The position numbers and the translations under genes are program-made. A DNA stretch of 64,000 nt from Octopus sinensis (taxonomy: Eukaryota). The stretch spans positions 124,558,001-124,622,000 of the forward strand of contig NC_043001.1 of the NCBI RefSeq assembly GCF_006345805.1, written 5' to 3'. The notes under the pieces are model-generated. The model was not told where the DNA came from and ran no database searches. It saw nothing but the letters and a program-made list of their open reading frames with translations. Shown piece after piece: positions 2,461 through 64,000 of this stretch. The first letter of the stretch is position 1. Every line of letters starts with the position of its first letter.

Positions 2461-5400
2461 ATGGATGACCTAATTATACCCATTATGTTCAATCAACTGT
2501 ATGATCATTCCAAAAGATAGGATGTTTTGCATTTTGTGAAAGCCCAAAAATATAAAAACTACTTCTTGCATGATACCCACTTTTTGAAAGAAAAATAACC
2601 TCTTATTAGAAGTGAATGGGGGCACTATATAATAGTCATAATGGACACTCAACTGGAGTTACCATCTTGTGTTTTAGTAATATTGACTATAAGGTACATG
2701 ACAATTTCAGGGATGGTAAAGGCAATCTCCTGATGTTAAGTTTTACTATTTGTGAGAGAAGGATAACTTTAGTTAACTTATATGGTCCCAATGCAGATGA
2801 ATCGCAGGTTTATGCTGTGGTGATGGATAAAGTGAAAACCTTTGGAAAATCCCATTGTATTATAGCTGGGTATTTTAATCTTTGTCTGCAGCAGTGTTTA
2901 GACACTTCCAACTATCAACATATAAATAATCCTAACGCCAGAAAGGAAGTGATCGATATGATAGGGGTCCTCGATCTTGTAGATGTTTGGGGAGAACATA
3001 ACCCAGAAACACAAGGCTATACATGGAAACGTTCAGAGCCCATTAGACAAGCAAGCCTAGATTTCTTTCTGGTGTCACTGAATTTCTATTCATTTATTTG
3101 CAGTATTCTATAAAGGTTGGGTACAGATCAGAACATTCTCTTGTAGACATTAAAATAAAATTTCCCGAGAAAGACGGCCGTAATGAACATATTGGAAATT
3201 TAATAACTTCCTCTTAAGAGATCCAAAATACATCTCATTGGTGAAGGGAACTATTAATAGTGTTGTCAAGCAATATGCCCCCTCCTTAGAACCTAATAGA
3301 AATATTACTACAGTTAATATGCTTGCGATTGAATTTATTGAAAGTAATCAGTTGTTTTGGTGGAACTCTGTTAATGGAAATTAGAGGAAAATCTATTTCA
3401 AACTCTTCATTAATAAGAACAGTCTAGAGTGAAAAAAATAACAAGATCTACTAGATTATATTAAGTAAATTGAAACCAATTTTGTAGAAATTAAGAAACT
3501 GGAGAAACAAAGAATAGAATTAGAAGAGATTCGTAATACAAAAATGGGGAGCATTATAATTTCTCACGGGCTAAGTGGATAGATCAAGTGGAGAGATTAG
3601 TCATTATTTTTTGCAAATTAGAAAATATGAATTTTTTAAGCAAAGGCATGACCCAGTTAGAGCTAGACAATGGATCTACTGTAGAAAATACAAAGGATTT
3701 TGTTCTTGAAGCAACATCATTTTACACATGCTCCTTGGAGTATGTGTTGAAAGAGTATGACCTTGATGAACTTTTTTTCTGAAGGGGACTTGTATAGGCT
3801 TAGTAAGGGAGATTCTGACTCATTGGAAGGCCCAATAACTCATGAAGAACTTTTAGAATGTTTGAAAAGGCAAAGAATAATATAAGTCCAGGTTTGGATG
3901 GGTTCAAATATGATCTTTATAAATTCTTTTGGAAAGATTCATCTGTTTTTGTTGAGGTCATTCAATTATAGCTTTGCTAAGGGTTTTATGCCAGTGACAC
4001 AGAGGCAAGGTATTATTATTTGTATTCGAAAAGGAGATAAGCCCAAGCTTTTCTTGAAGACCTGGAAACCTATTTCACTTCTTACTACTGCCTACAAACA
4101 TCTCTCATATGTTATTGCTGAGCGGTTCAAAAGTATCCTTACAAAGTTGGTTAGTATTAATCAAACAGGATTAATATCTAACAGATACATTGGCGATAAC
4201 ATAAGACTGATATACGATTTGATGAACCACACAGAATCAAATGATATACTTGGAATGTGGTTTTTAATAGATTTTGAGATGACATTTGATTCTGTCATAT
4301 GGTCATTTATAAACAAGACATTAGCTTTTTTGGTTCTGGTGATGACATCTGTAAGTGGTTTAATATTCTGTACAATAGTGCTAGATCTTGTCTCACTATT
4401 AATAGTACATTGTCTCCTTGGTTTCCTGTTGAGCGGGGCTGTAGGCAGGGTGATCCTTTCTCTCTATATACTTTCATCCTCTGTGTCGTGGTCCTGGGAG
4501 GTCTTATACGAAAGAACAGAGATATTAAAGGAATTACTGTTGATAATGGGGAGTATCTGTTGACGCACTATGCAGACGATACAGAGTTCCTTTTAGATGG
4601 TTCACAAGAGTCTTCTGAAACTGCAGTTGACACTTTGAACTTTTACGCTGATATATCCGGACTTGAAATTAATTATGATAAGTCTCAATTGATATGGATA
4701 CGTGCAAGAAGGAGCAGCTCAGTCAGACACTTACCTAATTTAAATAAACAATGGAACCTAGATCACTTCAAGCTTCTGGGTGTAATATTTTCAATAGAGT
4801 TAATGGTTGTGGCTAAAAAGGATTTTGAAAATAAATTATTTGAGATTCAAAGTAAAAATCAACAGATGGATGAAAAGATTAATTACACAGACTGGTAGAA
4901 TTGTTGTTATAAAGTCACTGCTCATTTCGAAATTGAACTATCTCTTCCTCACTCTCCCAAATCCACCGGGTAAATTTCTCCAGGAATTAAACAAAGTATT
5001 ATTTAAATTTCTCAACAGTGGAAAACCTGATAATTTTAAGAGAGTTGTTGCTTGTAAGCCTGTCAAAGAATGTGGGCTTGGTATGGTGGAAGCTTCTGCT
5101 TAAGTCAGCTCTTCAAGGCTATTCTGGATGAGAAAGTTGTTAGATATTAATTATGAATTGAAATGGAAACATTTGTGCTTTGCCTATTCCCCAAAACTAA
5201 AAATTTTAGCTGTATTTGGTAACGTTTTTCCGGGTAAACTGGCCAAGGATATCAAGAGTGATTTTTGGCATGATAGTATTTCTGCTTTTGATAAGTATAC
5301 AAATAAGACAGAACCTAATTCATTTGATGAATTCATAACAGAACGAATTTACTATAATAAACACTTAAAAGTTGGTAAAGAGGTAATCTTTTTTTTCGCG

Positions 5401-15689: not shown

Positions 15690-16060
<371 letters not shown>

Positions 16061-16540
16061 GATAGGCATAAAGAAAGAATTTTTGATTGACGGATTGACA
16101 GGTTGATTAACATAGATTAGTAAAGATAAACAGAGTATTATAGATATGAAGTAAATAATAAAACCCTGAAACGCAATACTGTTCTAACAACAAATAATAG
16201 GCAAAAACATAAAGACAGAATAATAAATAGTAATACGTATTTGCGCTTGTGTGCATGTGATGTATTACTAAAAAAAAAAATAAAAGAAGAACAAATAGAA
16301 CCTCCTTATTATATATACATACACCAACACATACATTCAACCAATGTGTTAAGTAGTCAAAACGAAAAAAGGAACGGCAACCGTCAATCAAAATATGATT
16401 CTTTTTTTGTTGTTTTGCTTTGTTTTTGCTTTATCTTTTTGGCAAAACTAGCAATATCGAAGGAGATATACTTTAATCTACTTCACCTTCTCTCTCTCTT
16501 TCTCTTTCTCTGTATATATATACATACATACATACATACA

Positions 16541-16572
<32 letters not shown>

Positions 16573-16613
16573 CACACACACATACATATATATATATATA
16601 TTATATATATATA

Positions 16614-16645
<32 letters not shown>

Positions 16646-16745
16646 TAGTGTCCATCAGTTTGTTTATCTGTCTGAATTTATGTGCGTATGCATGTATGTA
16701 TATACGTACGTACATATGTATGTATGTAGTTATGCACGTGTGTAT

Positions 16746-16858
16746 GTCATTATTTAGTTTATTTTAAGATCTCTTGCCAATAGAGAAAGAACCGGTTTCT
16801 AATCTAGATCCAAGGCTCCTTCACTGGAAATCCAATATCAACAGTAGGGTATTTTTGT
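16746..16858 (-). mobile_element. 3'UTR-only fragment of the R4/Dong-like element, embedded in (CATA)n
   Basis: Reverse complement 'ctgttgatattggatttccagtgaaggagccttggatctagattagaaaccggttctttctctattggcaag' matches 52822-52897. Confidence 0.75.
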
Positions 16859-18174
16859 ATGTATGTATGTATGTATGTATGTATGTATGTATGTATGTAT
16901 GTATGTATGTATGTATGTATGTATGCACGTTTGTACCTACGTATGTATAGTGATAGAGTGGTGCTATCCAAAAAGAACTTATCAACCGATGTACACGTTA
17001 TCGAATGTTAAAACAGCAGGAAATTTCAATAAGATTACCGGCACTATACAGCTCACGGTTTAGAAACAAAAAAAAACTGTTGATTATGCGAAGAAGAGAG
17101 TAAGAAATAGAAAAGGTAATTCAAGCCTAAATATGTTTTGAATCTAACATAATCATGTTTCATATAAGGCATTACAAATACGAATACTATTTAGCTTTTC
17201 CACAGGTCTAATAACAAGCAGATATTTTGTTTACGTCATCGTAAGGTGGAGAGAGTGAGTCACCAATTTAGTTACAATAGAATTGTTAGTACAATTAGCC
17301 AAATCAAATGACGAATGTTATTAATTTTTAGCAGACTACGTACGTGTGTGTGTGTGTGTCTATGAGTGTGTCTGAGTTTGTGTGCATATAAACATGCGTG
17401 GATATGTACGTATTCCTGTAAAGTGACAGACATACCATGCACAATCACTCTAACGCGCACATATATACATATATACATTTACATAATTACGTGCATACAC
17501 ACATTCACAGACATTATATACACGCATACACAAATACAGCCATCCATCCATCCATCCATACATGCATACATACATCCATACATACATCCATCCATCCATC
17601 CATACATACATACATACATACATCATACATACATACTACATACATACATACATACATACATACATACATGGATAGATAGATAGGCATAAAGAAAGAATTT
17701 TTGATTGACGGATTGACAGGTTGATTAACATAGATTAGTAAGATAAACAGAGTATTATAGATATGAAGTAAATAATAAAACCCTGAAACGGAATACTGTT
17801 CTAACAACAAATAATAGGCAAAAACATAAAGACAGAATAATAAATAGTAATACGTATTTGCGCTTGTGTGCATGAGATGTATTACTAAAAAACAAAAATA
17901 AAAAAAAAAACAAATAGAACCTCCTTATTATATATACATACACCACCACATACATTCAACCAATGTGTTAAGTAGTCAAAACGAAAAAAGGAACGGCAAC
18001 CGTCAATCAAAATATGATTCTTTTTTTGTTGTTTTGCTTTGTTTTTGCTTTATCTTTTTGGCAAAACTAGCAATATCGAAGGAGATATACTTTAATCTAC
18101 TTCACCTTCTCTCTCTCTTTCTCTTTCTCTGTATATATATACATACATACATACATACATACATAAATACATAC

Positions 18175-18243
<69 letters not shown>

Positions 18244-18343
18244 TGTCCATCAGTTTGTTTATCTGTCTGAATTTATGTGCGTATGCATGTATGTATATAC
18301 GTACGTACGTATGTATGTATGTATGTATTATGCACGTGTGTAT

Positions 18344-18455
18344 GTCATTATTTAGTTTATTTTAAGATCTCTTGCCAATAGAGAAAGAACCGGTTTCTAA
18401 TCTAGATCCAAGGCTCCTTCACTGGAAATTCAATATCAACAATAGGGTATTTTTG
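18344..18455 (-). mobile_element. duplicate of the R4/Dong-like 3'UTR fragment (second unit of the tandem duplication)
   Basis: Near-identical to 16746-16858. Confidence 0.75.
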
Positions 18456-18467
18456 TATGTATGTATG

Positions 18468-18501
<34 letters not shown>

Positions 18502-20088
18502 TGTATATGTATGTATGTATGTACCTACGTATGTATAGTGATAGAGTGGTGCTATCCAAAAAGAACTTATCAACCGATGTACACGTTATCGAATGTTAAA
18601 ACAGCAGGAAATTTCAATAAGATTACCGGCACTATACAGCTCACGGTTTAGAAACAAAAAAAAACTGTTGATTATGCGAAGAAGAGAGTAAGAAATAGAA
18701 AAGGTAATTCAAGCCTAAATATGTTTTGAATCTAACATAATCATGTTTCATATAAGGCATTACAAATACGAATACTATTAGCTTTTCCACAGGTCTAATA
18801 ACAAGCAGATATTTTGTTTATGTCATCGTAAGGTGGAGAGAGTGAGTGAGTCACCAATTTAGTTACCATAGAATTGTGAGTACAATTAGCCAAATCAAAT
18901 GACCAATGATATTAATTTTTAGCAGACTACGTACGTGTGTGTGTGTGTGTGTGTGTGTCTATGAGTGTGTCTGAGTTTGTGTGCATATAAACATGCGTGG
19001 ATATGTACGTATTCCTGTAAAGTGACAGACATACCGTGCACAATCACTCTAACGCGCACATAAAGACATATATACATTTACATAATTACGTGCATACACA
19101 CATTCACACACATTATGTACACGCATACACAAATACAGCCATCCATCCATCCATCCATACATGCATACATACATCCATACATACATCCATCCATCCATCC
19201 ATACATACATACATACATACATACATACATCCATCCATCCATCCATACATACATACATACATCCATACATACATACATACATACATACATCCATCCATCC
19301 ATCCATACATACATCCATACATACATCCATCCATCCATCCATCCATACATACATACATACATACATACATACATGCATACACTTAGTGAAGAATGAACTC
19401 ATGTTCCACTAAAACCAATTCCTGAAGTGCTGCCGAATCTCCGTCGCCACAGTATAGAAAAGTGGCAACCATTATACTAAGCCACCAGTGTGAAATTTTA
19501 AAATTACGTACATTCATTTTCACAGGCCTATATATTCTACAATACCCTCTAAGAGATCCATATTCTGATTACCAATGGAATAGCTTAGTTTTGGCAGTAT
19601 TAGTTGAGTCGCTCAGAAGCTGAATGATCCTCAGACTTTACGTTGGAAATTCCTACTCCTAGACACATGTGATAAGAGCATCACTCCAGGGTGATCTTGT
19701 GCCGTGCTTGTTCACAATAAGGATTATTCGTATGTCCCTGCGCAAATGCTAGTTAGTCGTTGATCTGATCTTGAGTTAATATCTTATCTTGGCAGCTATA
19801 GATTGTTGTCCTATGTTTTTGGCAACACACCTGAAGGATACCATTTAGCGGAAGAGCTGGTTTAGTCGACAACGATCCGGCCACGCTAAGTTTCACTCGA
19901 TTATATGTTACAAGTAGGACTCACGAGTGATTTGACACACACCCATACACACGCACGTGCACACACACACACACGCACACGCACACACACACACATACAC
20001 ACACTCGCACACACACACATACAGACACGCCTGCACTCACACACACACATACATATGTGTGTAAACGAATACATGCATTTATGTATAA

Positions 20089-20903: not shown

Positions 20904-21545
20904 GGCTTGCTTGTTTGATTGCTTGCTTCATGGTCTTGATTGATGGGGTTGGGATCATTACAGGTTAGTGATCCCAAAGGCGTCATGATGCATAGAACCA
21001 ACAAGATTCACCTATGCTCTTCATCGCTGACGGTTCGTGCCATTCTTTGTGCATCTTCCAAAGTCAGGTTGAGGCTCAGGAGGTCTTCCCTAATCATGTC
21101 TAGCCATCTGGTGCGGGGGTCTGCCTCGAGACATCATCCAGCCCGCAGCTGTTGCGTCGGACGACAGTAAAGCCCTGGTAAGATGATCTGGCAGGAGACG
21201 GAGGACATGTCTGTACCAGCGCATGTGACGGACAGTTACGAAGTGGAAGGTTGTGGGTTCATGCATGCGCGCACGTAGTTCCTCGTTAGATGTTCTAAGG
21301 GCTGTGGTATCGAAGCCATCGATCCTTTTTGCCAGGGTCTTCGAGAGAGGACACGTTTCTCCACCACAGAGGAGAAAGGAGAGGACCAAAGTCTTGCAGA
21401 TGCGGAGCTTCGTCTTTCGGAGGATGGAGCAGTGGCGCCAAAGGGGCATATATAGGGCGTACGGTTGATCTCCGGGGGGCAGGTTTCCATTGTTGGTGAC
21501 TGTGAAGCCGAGATAGATAAAGGAGCAATCATAGAGGCTCTTACA
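20904..21545 (-). mobile_element. RTE-clade LINE, 5'-truncated 3' end
   Basis: RKTKLRICKTLVLSFLL.GGETCPL..LAKRIDGFDT..SNEELRAR..RWYRHVLRL..RGRP pattern of RTE ORF C-terminus; (CAAG/CAAT)n tail at 20904-20945. Confidence 0.85.
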
Positions 21546-22150: not shown

Positions 22151-22415
22151 GAGTGGTTGTCTACTGTCAGCTTAACGTGACAGTCTTGTAAGGGAATTGG
22201 ACCACCGCTGTTTAGCCCTAGGAAGCATCGACGCCTCTTGTCGGCCTTGACACATTTCCTGTGTCCTTATATATTTACGAAGGGGAGACAAATATATAAG
22301 GACAGAGGAAATGTGTCAAGGCCGACAGGAAGCGTCGATGATTCCTAGGGCTAAACAACGGTGGTGCAATTCCCTTACAGGACTGTCACGTTAAGTTGAC
22401 AGTAGACAACCACTC
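22151..22415. mobile_element. palindromic MITE/foldback element, 126-bp arms with 13-bp spacer
   Basis: 22151-22276 is the near-perfect reverse complement of 22290-22415 ('gagtggttgtctactgtc...gacagtagacaaccactc'). Confidence 0.85.
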
Positions 22416-28879: not shown

Positions 28880-29560
28880 AAGGGTATCATTCTGTGTTCT
28901 GGAAATGCAATCTGCTGTCGGTGCACGCGTCTGATCAATAATCCCGTGGACCCTATGTAGTTTCTGTGGCAGTTCGAGCATGTTATAACATAAAACAGGT
29001 TTTCTGAGTCACAAGTAAAATCAGATTTGATTGTGATTTTTTCTCCCTCTTTGAAAAGGAATTGTCATCCGTCTAGAAGATTTGGGCATGCTGCGCAATT
29101 TGGTCGACCACATTTCTTCCCTTTCGCGTCCGTTATTTTAGAAAATAATTTTCCCTTTGTGAGGATAAGATACTCTGCCTTCCATCCAGCATGATCCCGT
29201 ACCCAGCGCGGACGTTTTCTCTTCATAACAGCAATCAATAAAAGTATACGTTCCAGTTTTCTGGCAGGTCTGCCAGGTTCAAGAAGCCTTCGTCGGACAG
29301 TTAAAGATGAAGCATCTACGCCAGCAGAATCCAAGGTCTCTGAAGGTATTTCCTGGTTTTCCTTGGATCCTTCACGCTGTTTCGTAAGGTTTCGTGTTGC
29401 GTCGTCTTCCACATCTTCTTCTTGTACGCCAGTGTCTTCAACTCCCTTCACAATCTCACTAACAGTTGATTTTGCCACATTCATTTCGTTAGCAGTCTGT
29501 CTGATACTAAAACTAACATTTTTTTTCTTAGAGCTACAATACTTGCACGCTTGCTGGGTG
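28880..29560 (-). mobile_element. Tc1-family transposase relic, internally deleted
   Basis: NVAKSTVSEIVK...SSLTVRRRLLEPGRPARK...MKRKRPRWVRDHAGW (Tc1 bipartite HTH); IF*TDDNS resembles the second catalytic D motif. A possible TIR 'acaccgtcgtgtgcaaatcc' (minus) lies at ~30190-30210. Confidence 0.75.
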
Positions 29561-29689
29561 TGATATCAATCATGAATTTAAAGGATAATAATGAACGCAC
29601 GCACGAACAACATAGAACGAGCTCTGGTGTAGCACTAAAGGAAATGCTGGAGCGAAGCCACAACTGATTAGATGCAGGATGTCGCCACT

Positions 29690-30118
29690 TGGTCTCAAGC
29701 ATTTGTCTTACGAAGAAAGGCTGAAGACGCTCGAACTTTATTCTCTAGAAAAACCACGACGCCGTGGTGATCTCATTCTTGCTCACAACATCATAAGCGG
29801 AAAGTGTAACCTCTTAAAAGGGCTGTTCTTCACTCCTGCTCCAGAGCGTCGGCTGCGGGGTCACTCCGAAAAGATCTATCTGCGACGATTTCACCTCAAT
29901 CGAAGGAGAGGGGCTTTCTCCGTCCGGGTTGCGAATCCGTGGAATAAGCTGCCGGACGAGATAGTGAAGATGCCGACGACCGCTCGGTTCAAAGTCTCTC
30001 TTGACCAGAAATGGCCTGAACTCTTTGTATGGACACCCTCCCTGTACATAACTCCATGTCCCCCTACATGGCCTTGCTTTTTGCTTTTTGAGCCAAAAAA
30101 TTAACTTAACTTAACTGA
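29690..30118 (+). mobile_element. CR1-clade LINE 3' end with (TTAAC)n tail
   Basis: LSYEERLKTLELYSLE..RRRGDLI..RGHSEK..AFSVRVANPWNKLP..FKVSLD is the canonical CR1 ORF2 C-terminus; 'ttaacttaacttaac' tail. Confidence 0.9.
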
Positions 30119-35770: not shown

Positions 35771-37840
35771 ATGCAAATGGATCATGTGAAGTTAATTACT
35801 GGAATATAAATTGGCTTATATGCAGCCGCTATAACTCTTAAAGAACGCCTAAGAGAAATCTACAGTAAACAAAGTAATGAAATTACTAAACGGAAACAGC
35901 GACTCTATCCCTCATTCATTGCTGTTGAAGTGCCTGCACCTGGCAAAAGTACCCACCACCCTAATTGCTGCTATAAAGAGACTCACAAAGACGTGGACAA
36001 CAGTTCCCACTCTTCCAACTGAGAACAGAATAGTTCAGATAGTGTAAGAGAACAGAATAGTGTCAGATAGTGTAAGCATCTCAAAGGGAATATTCTAGAG
36101 AGATAGCCTTTCTGTACTTCTTTTCATTTTATCACTGAATCTATTATCGTTCCTACAGCAGAAAACAAATGGTTACTTGCTAGGATCTTCAACTGCTAAA
36201 AATATCAATGTATCTCGTCAGTTCTTTGTAGACGACCTGAAGATTTATGCTAAAAGTGTAAACAATGCTGAAAAAACAACTGGAATTCATCATATTTTCA
36301 GCTGATATAGGTATGGAAATTGGCCAAAAGAAATGTTCAAATTTGGTTATAGAACGAAGTAAGTTCGTACCCCAAACTTAAAACCTGTGCATCAACGGTC
36401 TCTTTATCTCCTCCATTCCACACAAAGAATGTTACGAGTATCTAGGCATAGATGAAAATGTAACCATTGATGGAAATGTGAACAAAGATAAAGTGACCCG
36501 AGAATATTACACCAAACTTTGGAAAATATAGCAATCGGAAATCTCCTCTTGCAACAAAATAATATCCCACAATGCATTTGCAGTACCAGTCTGATCCCAA
36601 CATTTGTGATATTTGATTGGTCTGTAGAGGAAACCCTCTCCGTAGATATCAAAACCCGCAAAATCGCGACAACAACTGGGAACAGTCACAGAAATAATGA
36701 AGAAATGAAGAAGGTAGAGTCCTGAGATCAGTGCAAACAGCCTTCGAACGCCGTATGGCATCACTCAAGCAACACTTGCTTAACAACAGCAGCAATAATA
36801 AATATATAAATACAGTGCTGAAAAGTGAAGTGAGCAACATTGTACGAATTAGCAGCGATCTTCTCAAGAAGCACTCACTCCCTGATGAAACAGCTGGGCT
36901 CTCTTACGTCAGAGAAGACCTGGATGGAAAGCACTCAGCATAGAAACAAAAGACTATGCAAGGCTATGTTGCCCGGAAGCTTGAAGAAGCCAGTAGAATT
37001 GATGCGAAACGCAGCCTCTCTTGAATACAACGCCACTACATCACATCACACTTTGAGGGCTATGCGTTTGCAATCCAGGAACAGGAGATTGTCACAAAGT
37101 ACCTGGTGAGCAAGAGAGACAGTGACGCTCTTGTAATCCCAAGGTGCAACCGCATGTGTAGGCTATGTCATGTTTCTGTGGAAGACATCACGCATGTGAT
37201 TAGCAGCTGTCCTAAAATATCGTCACAATACTTCCTCCCTATGCAACTCGATGTCGTCACTAAAACAATTTATAATGCCATCCGCAACAAAGACAGTCCC
37301 GAAATACACCTAGAAAATCCCTCTGTTATAGAATGCATTCATAAACATCAACTCAAGGAATACTGGTGGAATATTCCCATCAAAACGTATGTCGCATGCA
37401 AACATAACAGGCTGGATATTGTCGTTTGGGACAAAGGGGCAAAGGTGTGTACCGTCATAGAGATCAGCTGCCCTGCAGATATATATATATATCTCTTTGA
37501 AAATAAAAGTAAAAGAGGATATCTATGGACAACTGCTTCCAAATCTCCAGCTTCTATATCCAGACTATGAATAATTGGAAAACTAGGTTTTGTTAAAAAT
37601 GCTAAAAGGAGAATCTGCATAAACTGGTATTTGCAGAAAGAGAAATTGATCGGCTGATTCGTACATTAAAGGTGCAATCTGTGAGTGGAAGAGTAAAAAT
37701 ATGCAAGACTTTTCTCAAGTTCCAAATGTGAATTTGTCTATATTAACTACATCCCAACGACGGAGCCTTGCCACTTTCTGGGAAACCGGCTCCCTACTCA
37801 GTGGAAGATTTATAATAATTAAAAATGAGAAGAGACATAC
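35771..37840 (+). mobile_element. R4/Dong-like (RLE-type) non-LTR retrotransposon, 5'-truncated, decayed
   Basis: DSIPHSLLLKCL, GIF*RDSLS, FFVDDLKIY, YLGIDE (RT); CRLCHVSVEDITHVISSC (CCHC); HNRLDIVVWD..VIEISCP (restriction-like endonuclease); 3'UTR ending in CATACATA. Confidence 0.85.
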
Positions 37841-44572: not shown

Positions 44573-44686
44573 CAGATAGACAGATAGGTATATAATATAT
44601 ATATATATATATATCTAGATATGTGAACAATATATATATATAGCTATATGTACAATATATATATATATATATATATAATTATCAAT

Positions 44687-45262
44687 ATAGGGGGGCAAAA
44701 AAAAATTTGTAGAATTTTTTTGCCACCAGCGGGCTAGTGGGAAAAAATTAAATAGTCATAGACCATTTTTAAGTTCAACATCAACAATCAAGGAACGGCA
44801 TAATAGGCCATTCACCCACTAGAAAACAGCCAAGCTTCAAAACCGCAATAAAAGTCATTCCGTAAACAGGAGAAAATTTAAAACATTTACCCTGTAATTC
44901 TTATACGATGCACCGTTTCATCTGCTGTTTAATGGTAAAAGTAACCTGATTAAATAAATCAAGCCAATCTCCATAGGCCCTCAGATTCTTCAGTAAGAAA
45001 TAGCCACAAGTCGGAACAGATATTTCACGAGGCATTTCCGACCCTGCCAAGGTAATATCTGACCTAAAATTTTCAAATCATCGCAAATTTAATCAGGTTA
45101 GTTTACCATTAAACAGCAGATAAACGGTGCATCGTATAAGAAATTACAGGGTAATGTTTTTTAAATTTTCTCCTGTTTACGGATTGACTTTTATTTGCGT
45201 TGAAGCTTGCTGCTATTTCTAGTGGGTGAATGGCCTATTATGGCCGTTCCTTGATTGTTGAT
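44687..45262. mobile_element. foldback/MITE-like element, copy 1 (176-bp inverted arms, ~130-bp spacer, extra terminal hairpin)
   Basis: 44780-44955 is the reverse complement of 45087-45262; flanked by (TA)n. Confidence 0.8.
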
Positions 45263-45289
45263 ATATATATATATATATATGTCTATATA

Positions 45290-45379
<90 letters not shown>

Positions 45380-45460: not shown

Positions 45461-45493
<33 letters not shown>

Positions 45494-45562
45494 TATGTGA
45501 ACAATATATATATATATAGATATATGTACAATATATATATATATATTATATAATTAATCAAT

Positions 45563-46148
45563 ATAGGGTGGCAAAAAAAAATTTTGTAGAATTTTTTTGC
45601 CACCAGCGGCCTAGTGGGAAAAAATTAAATAGTCATAGACCATTTTTAAGTTCAACATCAACAATCAAGGAACGGCCATAATAGGCCATTCACCCACTAG
45701 AAATAACAGCCAAAGCTTCAACCGCAAATAAAAGTCAATTCCGTAAACAGGAGAAAATTTAAAAAAAATTTACCCTGTAATTTCTTATACGATGCACCGT
45801 TTCATCTGCTGTTTAATGGTAAAGTACCTGATTAAATTAAATCAAGCAATCTTCCATAGGCCCTCAGATTCTCAGTAAGAAATAGCCACAAGTCGGAACA
45901 GATATTTTCACGAGGCATTTCCGACCCTGCCAAGGTAATATCTACCTAAAATTTTCAAATCATCGCAAATTTAATCAGGTTAGTTTACCATAAACAGCAG
46001 ATGAAACGGTGCATCGTATAAGAAATTACAGGGTAAATGTTTTTTAAATTTTCTCTGTTTACGGAATTGACTTTTATTTGCGGTTGAAGCTTTGGCTGCT
46101 ATTTCTAGTGGGTGAATGGCCTATTATGGCCGTTCCTTGATTGTTGAT
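45563..46148. mobile_element. foldback/MITE-like element, copy 2 (tandem duplicate)
   Basis: Arms 45657-45838 and 45968-46148; hairpin ggtggcaaaaa...tttttgccacc at 45567-45604; ~880-bp period with copy 1, including the flanking microsatellites. Confidence 0.8.
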
Positions 46149-46282
46149 ATATATATATATATATATGTACTATATATATATATATATATATCATACATAA
46201 TATATATATATATTATATATTATATATATATATATATATATTATATTATATATTATATAATATATATTATATATATATATGT

Positions 46283-48620: not shown

Positions 48621-49002
48621 GGAGGCTCAATGGCCCAGTGGTTAGGGCAGCGGACTCGCAGCCGTAGGATCGCGGTTTCGATTCCCAGACCGGGCGTTGT
48701 GAGTGTTTATTGAGCAAAAACACCTAAAGCTCCACGAGGCTCCGGCAGGGATGGTGGTGATCCCTGCTGTACTCTTTCACCACAACTTTCTCTCACTCTT
48801 TCTTCCTGTTTCTGTTGTACCTGTATTTCAAAGGGCCGGCCTTGTCACTCTCTGTGTCACGCTGAATATCCCCGAGAACTGCGTTAAGGGTACACGTGTC
48901 TGTGGAGTGCTCAGCCACTTACACGTTAATTTCACGAGCAGGCTGTTCCGTTGATCGTATCAACCGGAACCCTCGTCGTCGTAACCGACGGAGTGCTTCC
49001 AC
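48621..49002 (+). mobile_element. tRNA-derived SINE (young family), full length with TSD
   Basis: Head 'ggaggctcaatggcccagtggttaggg...ggtttcgattccc'; internal hairpin gcaggga/tccctgc; flanking direct repeat attaggaggc (48617-48626, 49003-49012). Confidence 0.9.
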
Positions 49003-53615: not shown

Positions 53616-54544
53616 TATATACATACATATATGCATACAGCTTTTAACATTTTAACCAATTTGAGGATGCTAGAAGCCCTTCTTCTTGCGAACGTTTCAT
53701 AGTGCAGAATCAAAGCTATAGTTGACCTGACTTCATTCTGAAGTTATACATAAGAAGCGATTGCATTATAACTGATAAAATACAGAATAGCAGAGATACG
53801 TTCCAAAAGAAAACGTTTCCGTAATACTGTTCAAAATATACCCAAACACATTCTAGAGATCTACCTATACATCCATGCATTTCTAAGAGTAAATGTAAAG
53901 TTGTGTTACATATGTATATTTTTTGTATCTATGGAGAGAAATTTCTGTTTCCATAAAACCAATATATATCTTCTAGATGTTTCTGTGTATATATTTTCTC
54001 TTTGTTCTGCTTGCTACAGTTTAGCAAATGCAATCACTAATGTATAAATCATTATATCATAATGTATTTATTACTTTAATTCCGCTGCTTTCGCCTTAAA
54101 ATTAAGATTTTCAAAGACTTTTCATTTATTCAAAGATTTCTGATATTCACCTGCAATGAAAATTGCAGAGTTTGCAATCAACAATGAATTCTAATGCAGA
54201 GAGTTAACTGAAAATCTGGATATCCTGCGTGATGTGAAACTATAGATGAATCTTGCAGCTAACAATTTTAAAATCAACAATTTGAAACACATCAAATAGA
54301 TTTATCAGTTCTTTCAAAATGTTAAAATCGATTAACGAAAAGATGCAGACCCCATAATAACAAAAATAAAAGCTATTCAAATATCGATTATATAATAGAG
54401 CTGAATAAATTTTGCACTGTACTGAGATTCATCTAAAATAAAGCATATTATATTTTTACTATCTTTAGTAGTATGTGGACCATACCAGACATGTAAAACA
54501 CAATCCATGAGCGCAAATCGTGATATTTTCGCCACTATATGACT

Positions 54545-54771
54545 GCTATCTGGCAGAAACGTTAGCACGCCGGGCGAAATGCGTAGCCGTATTTCGTCTG
54601 CCGTCACGCTGTGAGTTCAAATTCCGTCGAGGTCGACTTTGCCTTTCATTCCTTCGGGGTCGATAAATAAAGTACCAGTTACGCACTGGGGTCGATGTAA
54701 TCGACTTAATCCGTTTGTCTGTCCTTGTTTGTCCCCTCTATGTTTAGCCCCTTGTGGGCAATAAAGAAATA
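54545..54771 (+). mobile_element. tRNA-derived SINE with Nin/Deu-like central domain, best-preserved copy
   Basis: 'tggcagaaacgttagcacgccgggcg...gagttcaaattcc...gaggtcgactttgcctttcattccttcggggtcgataaataaagtaccag...aataaagaaata'. Confidence 0.85.
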
Positions 54772-55176
54772 TATATCACTGCTACATGGTCTGTGTCCAG
54801 TAAACCAAGATGCCATGTAAAGTTTCACATAGTGTTAAATCCAACTATCTGAATTTCTTTGCAATCTAAGTATATCACGGTCAAGGAATTATTACACAAT
54901 GGAAGTTTCGGAAGTCGTTAAAACAGCTAGAATTATCGATCTAAAATTTATAAATTCACTTTTTAAAGCACTGACGATTAAAATTTTTCCGGGAGCACAA
55001 TTGTCTGCAGGGCAATAACAAATAACTCACATAATTCATAGTAGTTTGGAACCTCACTGAAAATGTTGCTTCCATAGAAATACACATAAGTGATACATTA
55101 GTACATCAGAGACTTATTGTATTTGATGTCGCGTCCCATCATCGATCATTATTCAGTACAGTAAGTTAATAAAATA

Positions 55177-56508: not shown

Positions 56509-57743
56509 GTATGAAATTTGTAGAATAGAAAAAAGTTTGCTAATGTTTTATAAATACAAAGAATAGTTTTATTCATCGAAGTATGCACCCAAATTGTTAA
56601 TACACTTTTGCCATTTCAGCGGCAGCTTGTCCAGCCTGGAACTGTAAAAGCCTGGCAATCTAGAGTCAATACAGCATCGTCATCAAAAAGTCATCCAAAT
56701 TCTGGAAGAAGTTGTAGTCAGTGGGGGCATTAGCAGGTGAGTATGGTGGATAATGGAGAACTTCCAACTCCAACTCTTGTCGTTTCGCCAACGTCATTTT
56801 TGCAATGTGTAGTCTAGCGTTGTCTTGAAATAAAAATAGGAGTGGATCTGTTGACTAACCTAGGCTGTTTTCTTTTGCAAGTTTCTGTATCACTTGGTCC
56901 AGTTGGGTGCAGTATACTTCGGCCGTGATTGATGAGACAGATTTAATGATATCATAATGGATCACATCTGCGCCAGACCACTAAACACACACCATCAGCT
57001 TCTTTTGATGAATTTTGCTTTTTGGAATCTGTTTTGGTGGCTCGTCTTTGTCTAGCCATTGTGCTGAATGTTTACAGTTGTATTGAATCCATTTCTCATC
57101 ACATGTTACAATTTGATTAAAAATTATTCATTTTTGTGACGAGAAAGTAGCATAATGAAGGCTTTCCAAACGTTGCTGTTTCTGATTTTCATGGAGTTCA
57201 TGGGGAACCCACTTATCCAAATTTTTCACTCTATCGATTTGAACTAGGTGTGTCAATATTGTTTGCTTGCTAACACTAAACAACAACGATAATTCACAGG
57301 CACTTTGGGATGGATCTGAGACGACTGTGACTTTCCGTTCGTTATTATCGACCTTTGTTTTCTGGTCCACCGCGTTACTCATCTGTGAGGCCAAAGTTCC
57401 CAGAACGAAATTCTGCAAACTAATTTGATACTGTCTGCTGTGTAATAAAATTACAGAATGAAATACTCCATTAATATTCCGATCTGTCTGTAATGCTGTA
57501 TTTCCCAGAAAGAACTCATACTTCAAAACTGTACGAATTTCCGACTTATTCATCTCTAAACAATAACAGCAAATATCGATTTATAAATACTTTATAAAGT
57601 GCAAAATGAGTTAGAATAAAGAAATAGATGTGTCAGCTTTCTAACAAAAAATAAAGATTGTCAAAATATAATAATGGCACAAAATGAGCAGCTGTCAAAT
57701 TTTACCATATATCTTACAACAAATTTCATACTTGTCGACTTAA
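56509..57743 (-). mobile_element. Hsmar1/cecropia-like mariner, near full length, inactive
   Basis: MNKSEIR..KYEF..RNIN..LDKWVPHEL..; TCDEKWI; QDNARLH; YPPYSP; TIR core gtatgaaatttg (56509) / caaatttcatac (57720). Confidence 0.92.
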
Positions 57744-60471: not shown

Positions 60472-60856
60472 TGGAGGCGCAATGGCCCAATGGTTAGGGC
60501 AGCGGACTTGCGGTCATAGGATCGCGATTTCGATTCCCAGACCGGGCGTTGTGAGTGTTTATTGAGCGAAAACACCTAAAGCTCCACGAGCCTCCGGCAG
60601 GAGATGGTGGTGATCCCTGCTGTACTCTTTCACCACAACTTTCTCTCACTCTTACTTCCTGTTTCTGTTGTACCTGTATTTCAAAGGGCCGGCCTTGTCA
60701 CTCTCTGTGTCACGCTGAATAACCCCGAGAACTACGTTAAGGGTACACGTCTGTGGAGTGCTCAGCCACTTACACGTTAATTTCACGAGCAGGCTGTTCC
60801 GTTGATTCGGATCAACCGGAACCCTCGTCGTCGTAACCGACGGAGTGCTTCCATCC
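60472..60856 (+). mobile_element. tRNA-derived SINE (same family as 48621), full length with TSD
   Basis: High identity to 48621-49002; flanking direct repeat ctataataaaaa(a)g at 60455 and 60857. Confidence 0.9.
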
Positions 60857-61552: not shown

Positions 61553-61760
61553 AGCGGCAAGCTGGCCGAATCGTTAGCACGCTGGGCAAAATCCTTAGCG
61601 GCATTTCATGTTCTGAGCTCAAATTCTGCCGAGGCCGACTTTACATTTCATTCATTTGGGACCGACAAAATAAGTACCAGTTGAGCAATGGGGTCTATGT
61701 TATTGACTTACACGCCTCCTCTGAAATTGTTGGCCTTGTACCAAAATTTGAAACTAATAT
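61553..61760 (+). mobile_element. Nin/Deu-domain-like SINE
   Basis: 'gcggcaagctggccgaatcgttagcacgctgggc...gccgaggccgactttacatttcattc...aataagtaccagttgagcaatggggtc'; an oppositely oriented decayed copy follows at ~61775-61915. Confidence 0.75.
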
Positions 61761-62212
61761 CTGAAGGAAAATATTCGTCGGTCATATCGACCCCGGTACT
61801 TGATTCGTACCTCCTATTATCAGTATCTGAGAGACGAAAGAGGCAAAATTTCCTTCAGCAGAATTACAGCTCCATACATATAAAGCCGGAACACATAACG
61901 CAAGGCACTTTTTAAGGACTCATATTATGAACTATTTCTGGTAATTTATCCCACAGAACACTACCCAGCTAAAACACTGTTTTTACTTTATCTATAAACT
62001 CTATCTTTTACTCTATCTATATATGTGTGTGAGTGTGTGTGTGTGCATGTGTATATATATATTTCTCCTCAATTTATATTATTTAAAAAATAAGCCGGTA
62101 AAAAATTCATTATTTGTAATCTCTCCTGGGACTCTTTAACGTGACGGTTCACTGTATCATCACGACCTACACGCCAAAGATTGCAGGCCTTCTTTTTTAT
62201 GTCTTTTGTTCT

Positions 62213-63691
62213 TTATTTTTTACTTATGCTTGATTTATCAGAATCGTTAGAACATCAGGTATTCGGAATTCATATCCTTCCCGTTTTAACTCTTCTTTTC
62301 ATCATTCTGAAGTCGATGAGAAGAAGTACCCATCAGACATCAGGATCAATTCGATATACCAAACAATTTCCCTAAAATTTTTGACCTTTAACCTCGGTAC
62401 GAAATTTAAAAAGGCTGTTGTTTAGAAGAATCATTAAAACGTCAAATAAAATATCTTGATGTATTTTTTTCGACGGTTTGTGTTCTGAGTTCGGATCCCA
62501 CCGACATCAAATCTGGCCTTCATTCCCCAAGAATTATAAAAATAAAGTACCAGGCAAGACCTGCAGTCACTGTAATCGATTAATCCTATCCTGCATTTTT
62601 CAGACAGCAATAAAGTGCGTTACACTGGCGAAATCGGTAGAGTGCCGAAATTGATGCACTGTGATATTGCTTCTGGTTCTTCATATTTTGAATTTAGGTT
62701 ACTTCCTCCCCACGTGATCAACTTTGTCTTTCATCTTTCTGTGGATGATAAAATAAAAGTACCAGTGAAAAACTGGTATGGTGGTGGAGGTATATAATCG
62801 ACTAGTCCTCTCGACCCAAAGGTTTGGTTTTATGCCCAATTTAAAAGCAAAAGTAGTTGATTGATAGAATTTTACCTTGCTGTATGTGTTCCACTCTTTG
62901 TGCTCTGATGTTAAATCTCACCGAGGCCAACTCTAATTTTCATTTCACCAAAATCAATAAACCAGTCATGTACTGTCTTCCATGGTATGGAACACCTTTC
63001 TCATTCAAATAATTGGCCTTGCATCTGAATCAGAATCAGTTATTTTTGTAACGAAAGCAGTGGAGTATTGGAAAAATACGTTGCAGTTATGTGTTGTCTC
63101 CCTTTACCGTTGAAATCCTGCTCGAGTCAATGTAATCGAGGACACCCACTTGCCCAAACGCGTAGGAGCTTTGTTGAAATTTAAGCTAAAAGCACCTAAC
63201 TAGCAGCACATGTCGGTGAAAGAATCGAAAGAGAGTGCCGAAAACTTTTTATGAGATGGTACAATATCTCGACGATTTGAATTTAAAACCTGCCAGAGTA
63301 ACCTGGGCTCCTGAATCGATTAAATAAGAATCTATTCACATACACTAAGTTGATTCAATTTGTTATATGTGTTTATGAAAATGTGTGACATTGTTCCAAT
63401 ATTAGAAATGCGTATTTCCAATATTGGAAATGCTACTACTACCGCTGCTATTGGTGCTGCTGCTATTGGTGCTATTGGTGCTGCTGCTGCTGCTGCTGTT
63501 GCTTCTGCTACTGCCATGTGCATCATCAGTAATGCCACCTTACCAAAGACGCGGTCTAATAAAGTCGCTCTTTCCACATTCATATTGTCGACTTCAGAAT
63601 GATGAAAAGAAGAGTTAAAACGGGAAGGATATGAATTCCGAATACCTGATGTTCTAACGATTCTGATAAATCAAGCATAAGTAAAAAATAA
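62213..63691. repeat. perfect 104-bp inverted repeat (62213-62316 / 63588-63691)
   Basis: Base-by-base reverse-complement identity over 104 nt; spacer 1271 bp. Confidence 0.95.
62470..63330 (+). mobile_element. cluster of old, co-oriented Nin/Deu-like SINE relics
   Basis: Repeated decayed cores 'ttctgagttc...ttcat...ataaa..gtaccag...taatcga' at ~62480, 62690, 62900, 63100 and 63280. Confidence 0.55.
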
Positions 63692-64000
63692 CATTCACCA
63701 GTTAAATATATATCAGCAATGTGAACCAGGGTTGTTCGTTAGAGTAATATAACCACAAATATCCACATAACCAACGTTTACTCCAAGGTTCTGTTGCGCT
63801 GAATGAGCAAAAGAGAAATGCTCACGACAACCTTCCTGTGATCGTCCAACCGACTAGATAGCTGCCAAATTTCCTTTATATCATATCTTTCTGTCTTAAA
63901 GAAGAAACGGTACATTGGTTGAAATAAAGATAGGAATTTCATTGGAATGCGTTTAATTGTAGATTTGCTCAGTCAAGACTGACCTGGCATTGAGTCCATA

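What the first reader, a model, noticed from the sequence alone, without database searches (positions are those of the whole stretch)
62213..63691. Perfect 104-bp inverted duplication of a piece of an old SINE, 1271 bp apart
The arms are 100% identical although the sequence is a heavily decayed SINE relic, so this is a very recent copy of this locus, not two independent insertions. The left arm continues naturally into SINE sequence at 62317; the right arm is cut there. No TSD is seen, which argues against TIRs. This fits a ~1.4-kb inversion made by a staggered break (known to leave inverted duplications) or a templated inverted insertion. If transcribed, it creates a new perfect 104-bp duplex, showing how an ADAR substrate could be born in one step.
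Basis: partly seen in the sequence, partly recalled or inferred. Interest (0 to 1): 0.7.

Follow-up and report, generated by a model that had tools for sequence, protein, structure and literature searches.

The report
Young local inverted copy of SINE relic
A 104-base piece of an old, decayed SINE was very recently copied backwards and inserted 1.3 kb downstream in a repeat-rich animal genome; this is a neat but ordinary example of a known kind of replication or repair error, and nothing suggests a function.

Summary
Positions 62213-62316 and 63588-63691 are perfect reverse complements (104 nt, 1271-bp spacer). This is the longest exact inverted match in the window by a factor of two, and the sequence occurs nowhere else in the 64 kb.

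The arms consist of 13 nt of T-rich flank plus the 5' part of a SINE relic. The relic is about 73% identical to the window's SINE consensus, and both arms carry the same 32-nt deletion.

New evidence: the left arm sits in native context on both sides.
- Inside, the SINE continues (0 of 1000 random continuations score as well).
- Outside, a 38-nt T-rich tract runs across the boundary (frequency 0.26%).

The right arm is foreign on both sides. Together with 5 extra bases (TATTG), it is bracketed by a 6-bp direct repeat, CATTCA.

This favours a one-step templated inverted insertion (a long-range template switch) over a staggered-break inversion, transposon TIRs or independent SINE insertions.

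Three things could not be tested here: read support, genome-wide copy number and transcription or editing. No sequence from this organism is in the searchable collections.

The event is of a known kind and of low to moderate interest.

The parts
62213..62316 (+). Left arm, the parental copy. It consists of 13 nt of T-rich flank (62213-62225) plus the 5' part of an old SINE relic.
   Evidence: Exactly identical to the reverse complement of 63588-63691. SINE HMM hit at 62239-62337. The SINE 5' end lies at about 62226, judged by comparison with the heads of the other copies.
63588..63691 (-). Right arm, the derived inverted copy. The SINE is cut after ...GTCGA.
   Evidence: SINE HMM hit at 63665-63579 on the minus strand, with the same 32-nt deletion as the left arm. 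Its inner continuation adds only a weak score, p about 0.017. Its outer flank is not T-rich.
62317..63587 (.). The 1271-bp spacer. It is ordinary repeat-rich DNA: the rest of the parental SINE relic, three further old SINE relics on the + strand (62423-62582, 62625-62803, 62873-62991) and a (GCT)n-like microsatellite (63431-63514).
   Evidence: nhmmer hits, Tandem Repeats Finder. There are no Pfam-bearing ORFs, only short ORFs.
62226..62400 (+). The old SINE relic that carries the left arm and continues past its inner edge.
   Evidence: The HMM alignment runs through 62316|62317 to model position 137. The score of 51.5 bits exceeds all 1000 random continuations. Identity to the window consensus is 73%. 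The 3' limit of about 62400 was judged by eye.
62188..62225 (+). T-rich tract (27 T in 38 nt) that straddles the outer edge of the left arm at 62212|62213.
   Evidence: The 23 nt left of the arm hold 17 T. Only 0.26% of 23-mers in the window are that T-rich. The corresponding flank of the right arm has 9 T in 23 nt.
63577..63582 (+). CATTCA, left copy of the 6-bp direct repeat that brackets the inserted copy.
   Evidence: The chance frequency of such a flanking repeat is 1.4% (offset up to 5 nt on one side) to 4.8% (offset up to 8 nt on both sides).
63583..63587 (+). TATTG, five bases between the left CATTCA and the right arm. They are not explained by the template and are treated as filler.
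63692..63697 (+). CATTCA, right copy of the direct repeat. It starts at the first base after the right arm.

Best explanation
This is a real and evolutionarily very young local inverted duplication, made in one step at the DNA level.

The 104-nt stretch 62213-62316 consists of 13 nt of a T-rich tract plus the first part of an old SINE relic. It was used as a template, and its reverse complement was inserted 1271 bp downstream, between 63582/63587 and 63692. The insertion came with 5 unexplained bases (TATTG) and a 6-bp duplication of the target (CATTCA).

The most likely process is a template switch during replication or break repair. A 3' end leaves its template near 63587. It copies the other strand, or its own upstream product, from 62316 back to 62213. 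It then returns or is end-joined. This is a long-range version of the '3-2-1-4' template-switch event, or equivalently a templated insertion at a staggered break.

The element has no function of its own. Its consequences would be:
- a potential perfect 104-bp RNA duplex if both arms are co-transcribed, which could be a substrate for ADAR or RNAi;
- a cruciform-prone site;
- a substrate for recombination that could flip the spacer.

Shown: the exact repeat, its uniqueness in the window, its SINE origin, the native context of the left arm and the direct repeat around the right arm.

Inferred: the direction of copying, the mechanism and the youth of the event.

Not tested: read support, genome-wide copy number and transcription.
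For: - The repeat is an exact 104-nt inverted repeat with sharp edges and the longest exact inverted match in the window.
- Both arms share a 32-nt deletion relative to the SINE model and 13 nt of non-SINE flank.
- The left arm is native inside: the SINE continues, and 0 of 1000 random continuations reach its score.
- The left arm is native outside: a T-rich tract crosses the boundary, frequency 0.26%.
- The right arm's inner neighbour is at most faintly SINE-like, and its outer neighbour is ordinary sequence.
- A CATTCA direct repeat brackets TATTG plus the right arm, p about 0.014-0.05.
- The arms differ at 0 of 104 positions, while the relic is 27% diverged from the consensus and other local duplications in the window are about 5% diverged.
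- There are no Ns in the window, so no scaffold gap lies near the locus.
- Template switching is documented to create perfect inverted repeats in one event (PMC5453318, PMC10710096).
Against: - No reads, other individuals or other species could be examined, and no DNA of this organism is in the searchable collections.
- Documented template-switch mutations copy tens of bases over tens of bases; the cases read here were 28-83 nt. This event copies 104 nt from 1.27 kb away.
- In the human-chimp survey, events whose return point precedes the leaving point were not observed. Such events would duplicate target bases, so the CATTCA repeat fits a staggered break better than a pure switch-and-return.
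- There is no microhomology at either junction of the right arm (read directly from the sequence).
- The direct repeat and the T-tract arguments were found post hoc.
Confidence: 0.55

Rival explanations
1. A micro-inversion of about 1.4 kb made by a staggered break (Ranz model). A 104-nt overhang is filled in on both ends, the segment is re-joined inverted, and the overhang sequence ends up duplicated in inverted orientation at both ends.
For: The overall geometry fits: an inverted repeat of formerly unique sequence flanks a segment. Reported duplications range from 46 bp to 1.9 kb, and 12 of 18 are one-sided (PMC1885836). A later recombination between the arms could flip the spacer back and give exactly the observed arrangement.
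Against: The model predicts that each arm keeps native context on one side only. Here the left arm is native on both sides and the right arm on neither. Rescuing the model needs a second event, a recombination flip. There is no second inverted duplication at the other breakpoint (read directly from the sequence). The CATTCA direct repeat has no role in this model.
Confidence: 0.1
2. An assembly or polishing artefact. Either the right arm is not in the real genome (a chimeric read or a mis-joined piece), or two diverged arms were homogenised by polishing.
For: A perfect repeat in old, decayed sequence is what an artefact can look like, and nothing here tests read support. A small contig placed in the wrong orientation with an unmerged end overlap would mimic the pattern.
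Against: There are no Ns in the 64-kb window. There is no matching second overlap at the other end of the segment (read directly from the sequence). The left arm is native on both sides, which a flipped contig would not give. The structure of 5-nt filler plus 6-bp direct repeat looks like a repair junction rather than an assembler join.
Confidence: 0.12
3. The arms are terminal inverted repeats of a non-autonomous DNA transposon (Tc1/mariner-like), with a TA target duplication hidden in the palindromic outer ends.
For: The arrangement t-TA-tttttt...aaaaaa-TA-a is compatible with a TA duplication. Tc3-like and Mos1-like transposase relics and foldback or MITE-like elements occur in the window.
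Against: - There is no other copy in the 64 kb.
- An old SINE relic runs across the inner edge of the left 'TIR', and a T-rich tract runs across its outer edge, so the unit is ordinary host DNA in its native context.
- The termini (TTTTTTACTT) do not resemble the usual Tc1/mariner ends. This is from my own knowledge and was not tested.
- The interior consists only of SINE relics and a microsatellite.
Confidence: 0.06
4. An RNA-mediated insertion. A LINE reverse transcriptase copied a local antisense transcript, priming in its A-rich stretch. This gave a 5'-truncated copy with extra 5' bases and a target-site duplication.
For: The 6-bp direct repeat, the A-rich 3' end of the insert (GTAAAAAATAA) next to the downstream repeat, the 5' truncation and the 5 extra bases are the classic marks of target-primed reverse transcription. 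LINE reverse-transcriptase genes are present in this genome.
Against: The source lies only 1.27 kb away, which is natural for DNA template switching but an unlikely coincidence for retroposition. The A-rich end is template-encoded and only 9 nt long, with no added poly(A). The target CCA|CATTCA is not an L1-type TT|AAAA site, and the primer end would not pair with the RNA (read directly from the sequence).
Confidence: 0.06
5. Two independent insertions of the same SINE in opposite orientation, possibly homogenised by gene conversion.
For: SINE relics are very dense here: at least 7 lie within 61.5-63.7 kb, on both strands.
Against: The right arm holds only the SINE 5' part, whereas retroposed copies always keep the 3' end. 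Both arms share 13 nt of non-SINE upstream flank and the same 32-nt deletion. Identity drops from 100% to random at both edges.
Confidence: 0.01

Closest known systems
Template-switch mutations (Ripley quasi-palindrome model; four-point model of Loytynoja & Goldman 2017, type '3-2-1-4'; Monttinen et al. 2023)
   Same: A reverse-complement copy of nearby sequence is written into the nascent strand in one event. This creates a perfect inverted repeat or hairpin from sequence that had none, and the source stays in place.
   Different: The scale differs: 104 nt copied from 1271 bp away, against tens of nt over tens of nt. The 6-bp target duplication implies a return upstream of the leaving point, a class not observed in the human-chimp survey. 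Five unexplained filler bases are also present.
Inverted duplications at inversion breakpoints from staggered breaks (Ranz et al. 2007, Drosophila)
   Same: An inverted duplication of formerly unique, non-repetitive-family sequence flanks a segment. The size lies within the reported range of 46 bp to 1.9 kb, and one-sided duplications are common.
   Different: Those inversions are chromosomal in scale. Each copy keeps native context on one side only, whereas here the left copy is native on both sides.
Templated and foldback insertions at double-strand breaks (e.g. yeast, PMC11724301; polymerase-theta-type templated insertions)
   Same: An insertion at a break copied from nearby sequence, often inverted, with small filler and junction irregularities (abstract listed).
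   Different: The reported inverted insertions are mostly about 5-34 bp and are copied from right next to the break. Here the copy is 104 nt and comes from 1.27 kb away.
Pairs of oppositely oriented SINEs (such as Alu pairs) and palindromic repeats as ADAR hyper-editing substrates (Porath et al. 2017)
   Same: Two inverted copies of SINE-derived sequence lie within about 1-2 kb and could pair in one pre-mRNA. Most hyper-editing maps to such structures, and octopus shows a very strong hyper-editing signal.
   Different: Those duplexes arise from independent insertions of a repeat family and are imperfect. This one is a perfect duplex born from a single local copy. Whether it is transcribed or edited is unknown.
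MITE or foldback elements (examples in this window at 22151-22415 and 44.7-46.2 kb)
   Same: Long inverted arms of more than 100 nt.
   Different: Those have short loops and arms 93-94% identical, and one of them is seen in two tandem copies. The present repeat has a 1.27-kb spacer of host SINE relics, has perfect arms, and its left arm is continuous with host sequence on both sides.

Membership tests
Template-switch mutation (four-point model, type 3-2-1-4) | A new reverse-complement copy of nearby sequence | tested here: met
   104-nt exact inverted copy 1271 bp from its source.
Template-switch mutation (four-point model, type 3-2-1-4) | The source copy is left intact in its native context | tested here: met
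   The SINE continues across the inner edge (0 of 1000 random continuations match). A T-rich tract crosses the outer edge (frequency 0.26%).
Template-switch mutation (four-point model, type 3-2-1-4) | Short range (tens of bases) and a return point not upstream of the leaving point | tested here: not met
   The distance is 1271 bp and the copy is 104 nt. The CATTCA duplication implies re-copying of 6 nt. The event therefore works like a template-switch mutation but lies outside the surveyed class.
Template-switch mutation (four-point model, type 3-2-1-4) | The ancestral or outgroup sequence lacks the copy | not testable with these tools
   No DNA of this organism or its relatives is in the searchable collections.
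Staggered-break inversion with breakpoint duplication | An inverted duplication of unique sequence at the two ends of a segment | tested here: met
Staggered-break inversion with breakpoint duplication | Each copy has one native and one novel junction (a-b ... c'-b') | tested here: not met
   The left arm is native on both sides and the right arm on neither.
Staggered-break inversion with breakpoint duplication | The segment is inverted relative to the ancestor | not testable with these tools
   No outgroup is available. No feature is restored at either reconstructed ancestral junction.
DNA transposon or MITE with terminal inverted repeats | Terminal inverted repeats | tested here: met
   Formally met: 104-nt perfect arms.
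DNA transposon or MITE with terminal inverted repeats | A target-site duplication flanking the whole unit | tested here: inconclusive
   The flanks (…gttct / cattc…) show no direct repeat. Only a palindromic TA hidden inside the arm ends remains possible.
DNA transposon or MITE with terminal inverted repeats | Multiple copies in the genome | not testable with these tools
   There is no second copy in the 64-kb window, and the rest of the genome is not available.
DNA transposon or MITE with terminal inverted repeats | The element ends are discontinuous with the host sequence | tested here: not met
   A host T-rich tract and a host SINE relic run across the two edges of the left arm.
LINE-mediated retro-insertion (target-primed reverse transcription) | A target-site duplication around the insert | tested here: met
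   CATTCA at 63577-63582 and 63692-63697, chance 1.4-4.8%.
LINE-mediated retro-insertion (target-primed reverse transcription) | A 3' poly(A) or A-rich tail added at the downstream junction | tested here: inconclusive
   The insert ends in GTAAAAAATAA, but this is encoded in the template (the complement of the T-rich tract). No added tail is present.
LINE-mediated retro-insertion (target-primed reverse transcription) | The source is an expressed RNA | not testable with these tools
   No RNA data are available.
Independent SINE insertion | The copy keeps the SINE 3' end and has its own flanks | tested here: not met
   The right arm has only the 5' part of the SINE (HMM alignment positions 8-125; the arm itself ends at about position 117). 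It shares 13 nt of upstream flank with the left arm.

The most novel reading that the evidence does not exclude
The right arm is a cis retro-copy. A LINE reverse transcriptase acted at a nick 1.3 kb away and copied a local antisense transcript from its internal A-rich stretch. This left a 6-bp target duplication, an A-rich 3' end and 5 extra 5' bases. If so, retrotransposon machinery could create perfect dsRNA-forming inverted repeats next to their source in one step.
Probability: 0.06. Interest if true: 0.5.

Novelty: new member of a known kind. Interest (0 to 1): 0.25.

Why it matters
If the locus is real, it is a clean natural snapshot of how a perfect long hairpin-forming repeat appears in a single mutation from ordinary junk DNA. 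The scale, 104 nt copied from 1.3 kb away, is larger than the template-switch events catalogued so far.

In animals with very active ADAR editing, such events could seed new editing, RNAi or innate-immune substrates. They could also create small invertible segments.

As a single unverified locus with no sign of function, it mainly serves as a well-defined test case. The predicted empty site and junctions are given below for population or long-read checks.

Tried and rejected
- Looked for other copies of the arms in the window with a 40-mer probe allowing up to 3 mismatches and with sensitive blastn. None were found.
- Looked for the locus in other assemblies.
  - A protein-word search with the 64-aa ORF across the left arm found nothing.
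  - Exact-product look-ups of two nearby ORFs found nothing on record. The first ORF has a GTG start, so an M/V mismatch could also explain that miss.
  - A metagenome scan for an arm 27-mer gave 0 hits. A control scan for the conserved SINE core also gave 0, so the negatives say nothing about copy number.
- Compared the sequences just inside and just outside the two arms. There is no similarity beyond chance.
- Looked for a second small inverted duplication at the other breakpoint, which two staggered breaks would leave. None is present (read directly from the sequence).
- Rebuilt the two alternative ancestral junctions (insertion model and inversion model) and searched for a repeat or SINE spanning either. 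Nothing informative was found.
- Tandem Repeats Finder, Rfam and tRNA scans of the locus gave nothing relevant. The only Rfam match is a spurious mir-297 hit on a TG repeat.
- Checked for microhomology at the right-arm junctions. There is none. An 8-mer, ATTCATAT, is shared between 63578-63585 and the arm interior (62268-62275). I judged this compatible with chance.
- Rejected the gene-conversion and independent-SINE readings because of the shared flank and the missing SINE 3' part.

Full report
**1. Observation**

- Positions 62213-62316 and the reverse complement of 63588-63691 are identical over 104 nt. They are separated by 1271 bp.
- The bases just outside (T/G) and just inside (T/C) do not pair, so both edges are sharp. 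The repeat finder's '113 nt, 96%' figure is only an ungapped over-extension.
- A 40-mer from the arm, allowing up to 3 mismatches, occurs only at the two arms, with 0 expected by chance.
- Sensitive blastn of 62000-64000 against the whole window finds no further relative of the arms.
- Among all exact inverted matches in the window, this 104-mer is the longest by a factor of two. The next longest, at 49 nt, belong to a foldback element near 45 kb.

**2. Genomic setting**

The window is AT-rich (28-44% GC), has no Ns and is full of microsatellites. It carries several transposon relics:
- LINE reverse-transcriptase fragments at 3898-4898;
- a weak, sub-threshold match to a Tc3-type transposase HTH domain at 29068-29484(-);
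- a weak, sub-threshold match to the Mos1 transposase HTH domain at 57131-57553(-).

It also holds a SINE that I could model from the window's own copies. This is an animal genome. The SINE motifs remind me of octopus SINEs, but that is memory, not a test.

The SINE HMM was seeded on 54535-54775 and iterated. Around the locus it finds relics at:
- 61560-61709(+)
- 61913-61775(-)
- 62239-62337(+)
- 62423-62582(+)
- 62625-62803(+)
- 62873-62991(+)
- 63665-63579(-)

The hits at 62239 and 63665 are the two arms.

**3. What the arms are made of**

Both arms align to the SINE model from position 8 onward and show the same 32-nt internal deletion. Comparison with the heads of the other copies puts the SINE 5' end at about 62226. 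The outer 13 nt of each arm (TTATTTTTTACTT) therefore lie outside the SINE.

The relic is 73% identical to the window consensus. The arms differ at 0 of 104 positions, which gives a 95% upper bound of 2.9% divergence. Other local duplications in the window are about 5% diverged.

The arms are therefore copies of one another. The copy was made long after the SINE inserted, and it is the youngest duplication visible in the window.

Independent SINE insertions are excluded for two reasons. The right arm has only the 5' part of the SINE, whereas retroposed copies keep the 3' end. The arms also share non-SINE flank.

**4. Which arm is the parent**

I scored the SINE model on the arm with different continuations.

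| Sequence scored | Bits | Comparison with 1000 random continuations from the window |
|---|---|---|
| Arm alone | 37 | not applicable |
| Left arm + next 80 nt | 51.5 | above all 1000 (maximum 50.1) |
| Right arm + next 80 nt | 45.9 | 98.3rd percentile |

The left arm runs on into the SINE (...GTCGATGAGAAGAAGTACCCATCAG..., where the consensus has ...GTCGATAAATAAAGTACCAGTCAAG...).

**5. New observation 1: the left arm is also native on its outer side**

A T-rich tract at 62188-62225 (27 T in 38 nt) runs straight across the outer edge at 62212|62213. The 23 nt left of the arm contain 17 T, and only 0.26% of 23-mers in the window are that T-rich. The equivalent flank of the right arm has 9 T in 23 nt.

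The left arm is therefore in native context on both sides, and the right arm on neither.

**6. New observation 2: a direct repeat around the right arm**

The right arm is bracketed by a direct repeat:

CATTCA (63577-63582) - TATTG (63583-63587) - arm (63588-63691) - CATTCA (63692-63697).

In this window, a direct repeat of at least 6 nt placed like this around a random 104-nt segment occurs at 1.4% of positions when the left copy may end up to 5 nt before the segment and the right copy must start directly after it. The figure is 4.8% when an offset of up to 8 nt is allowed on each side. Both figures are inflated by microsatellites. The pattern looks like a 109-nt insertion (5 nt of filler plus 104 templated nt) with a 6-bp target duplication. 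I found it post hoc, so I treat it as supportive rather than decisive.

**7. Choosing between mechanisms**

*Staggered-break inversion.* This model (PMC1885836) gives a-b-c'-b'-e, in which each copy has one native and one novel junction. That does not fit either mirror image of the locus, because the left arm is native on both sides. It could be rescued only by a second event, a recombination between the arms that flips the spacer back. The result would then be indistinguishable from an insertion, and the direct repeat would remain unexplained.

Even so, host features cross both edges of the left arm, the interior is only SINE relics and a microsatellite, and no other copy is in the window.

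*RNA-mediated copy by LINE machinery.* This would explain the target duplication, the A-rich 3' end (GTAAAAAATAA) and the extra 5' bases. Against it, the A-rich end is template-encoded, the target is not L1-like, and a source only 1.27 kb away is what DNA template switching predicts, not retroposition.

*Assembly artefact.* This cannot be excluded without reads. The window is gapless, however, and the junction structure looks biological.

*My choice.* I favour a single DNA-level templated inverted insertion. In the four-point template-switch scheme this is the '3-2-1-4' type, which creates an inverted repeat. The event is much longer-range than those catalogued. Its 6-bp target duplication belongs to a class (return point upstream of leaving point) that was not seen in that survey. 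A staggered break repaired with a templated insertion is therefore an equally good description.

**8. Consequences**

Folded as one RNA, the 1479-nt unit forms the expected uninterrupted stem of about 104 bp. The duplex energy of the arms alone is -175 kcal/mol, and they are 32% GC.

Most ADAR hyper-editing in animals maps to long, near-perfect duplexes formed by neighbouring inverted repeats, and octopus has an exceptionally strong hyper-editing signal (PMC5625713). That template switching can create perfect hairpins in one step is already established (PMC10710096).

Whether this locus is transcribed at all is unknown. The window also holds other long hairpin-forming elements (22151-22415 and 44.7-46.2 kb), so potential dsRNA is not rare here.

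**9. What could not be done**

None of the searchable collections contains this organism. The ORF-based searches and look-ups found nothing. Neither the arm nor the highly repeated SINE core occurs in the metagenome collection. Read support, genome-wide copy number, polymorphism and editing all remain open. The exact sequences that would decide them are listed under the next steps.

**10. Verdict**

This is a new instance of a known kind of mutation, with no evidence of function, and of low to moderate interest.

Noticed in passing
window 15982-17682 and 17602-19283: A tandem segmental duplication of about 1.7 kb at 94.8% identity. It includes microsatellite blocks and has exact stretches of up to 102 nt.
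   Followed up: partly
window 44600-45354 and 45474-46241: Two tandem copies (94.6% identical) of a unit of about 0.77 kb. Each contains a long foldback element with arms of roughly 110-200 nt at about 93% identity, for example 45657-45770 / 46035-46148. It looks like a MITE or foldback-type repeat duplicated in place.
   Followed up: partly
window 22151-22415: An almost complete palindrome: 126-nt arms, 94% complementary, with a 13-nt loop. It looks like a MITE or hairpin element and could form a long RNA or DNA hairpin.
   Followed up: no
window 48621-49001 and 60473-60853: A dispersed direct repeat of 383 bp at 95.6% identity, 11.8 kb apart. It is probably a young interspersed repeat family, distinct from the SINE.
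   Followed up: no
window 61555-63665: An unusually dense cluster of at least 7 old SINE relics within 2.1 kb. Four in a row lie on the + strand at 62239, 62423, 62625 and 62873. There may be a fifth, deletion-ridden relic near 63100-63150, seen only by eye. Tandem Repeats Finder does not call it a tandem array.
   Followed up: partly
window 2616-4898; 21090-21449(-); 29679-30104; 37106-37570; 29068-29484(-); 57131-57553(-): Transposon protein relics. RVT_1 reverse-transcriptase fragments lie at 3898-4898. The ORFs at 21090, 29679 and 37106 look like LINE C-terminal regions by eye but have no Pfam hit. There are weak, sub-threshold matches to a Tc3-type transposase HTH domain at 29068-29484(-) and to the Mos1 transposase HTH domain at 57131-57553(-).
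   Followed up: partly
window 63393-63435: A small tandem duplication of about 21 nt (TTCCAATATTAGAAATGCGTA / TTTCCAATATTGGAAATGCTA). It also forms a local hairpin (CCAATATT...AATATTGG) just upstream of the (GCT)n-like microsatellite at 63431-63514.
   Followed up: no
window 63578-63585 and 62268-62275: The 8-mer ATTCATAT lies next to the inner junction of the right arm and also occurs inside the left arm (as ATATGAAT in the right arm). This could be a trace of a second, short template switch, or it could be chance.
   Followed up: no
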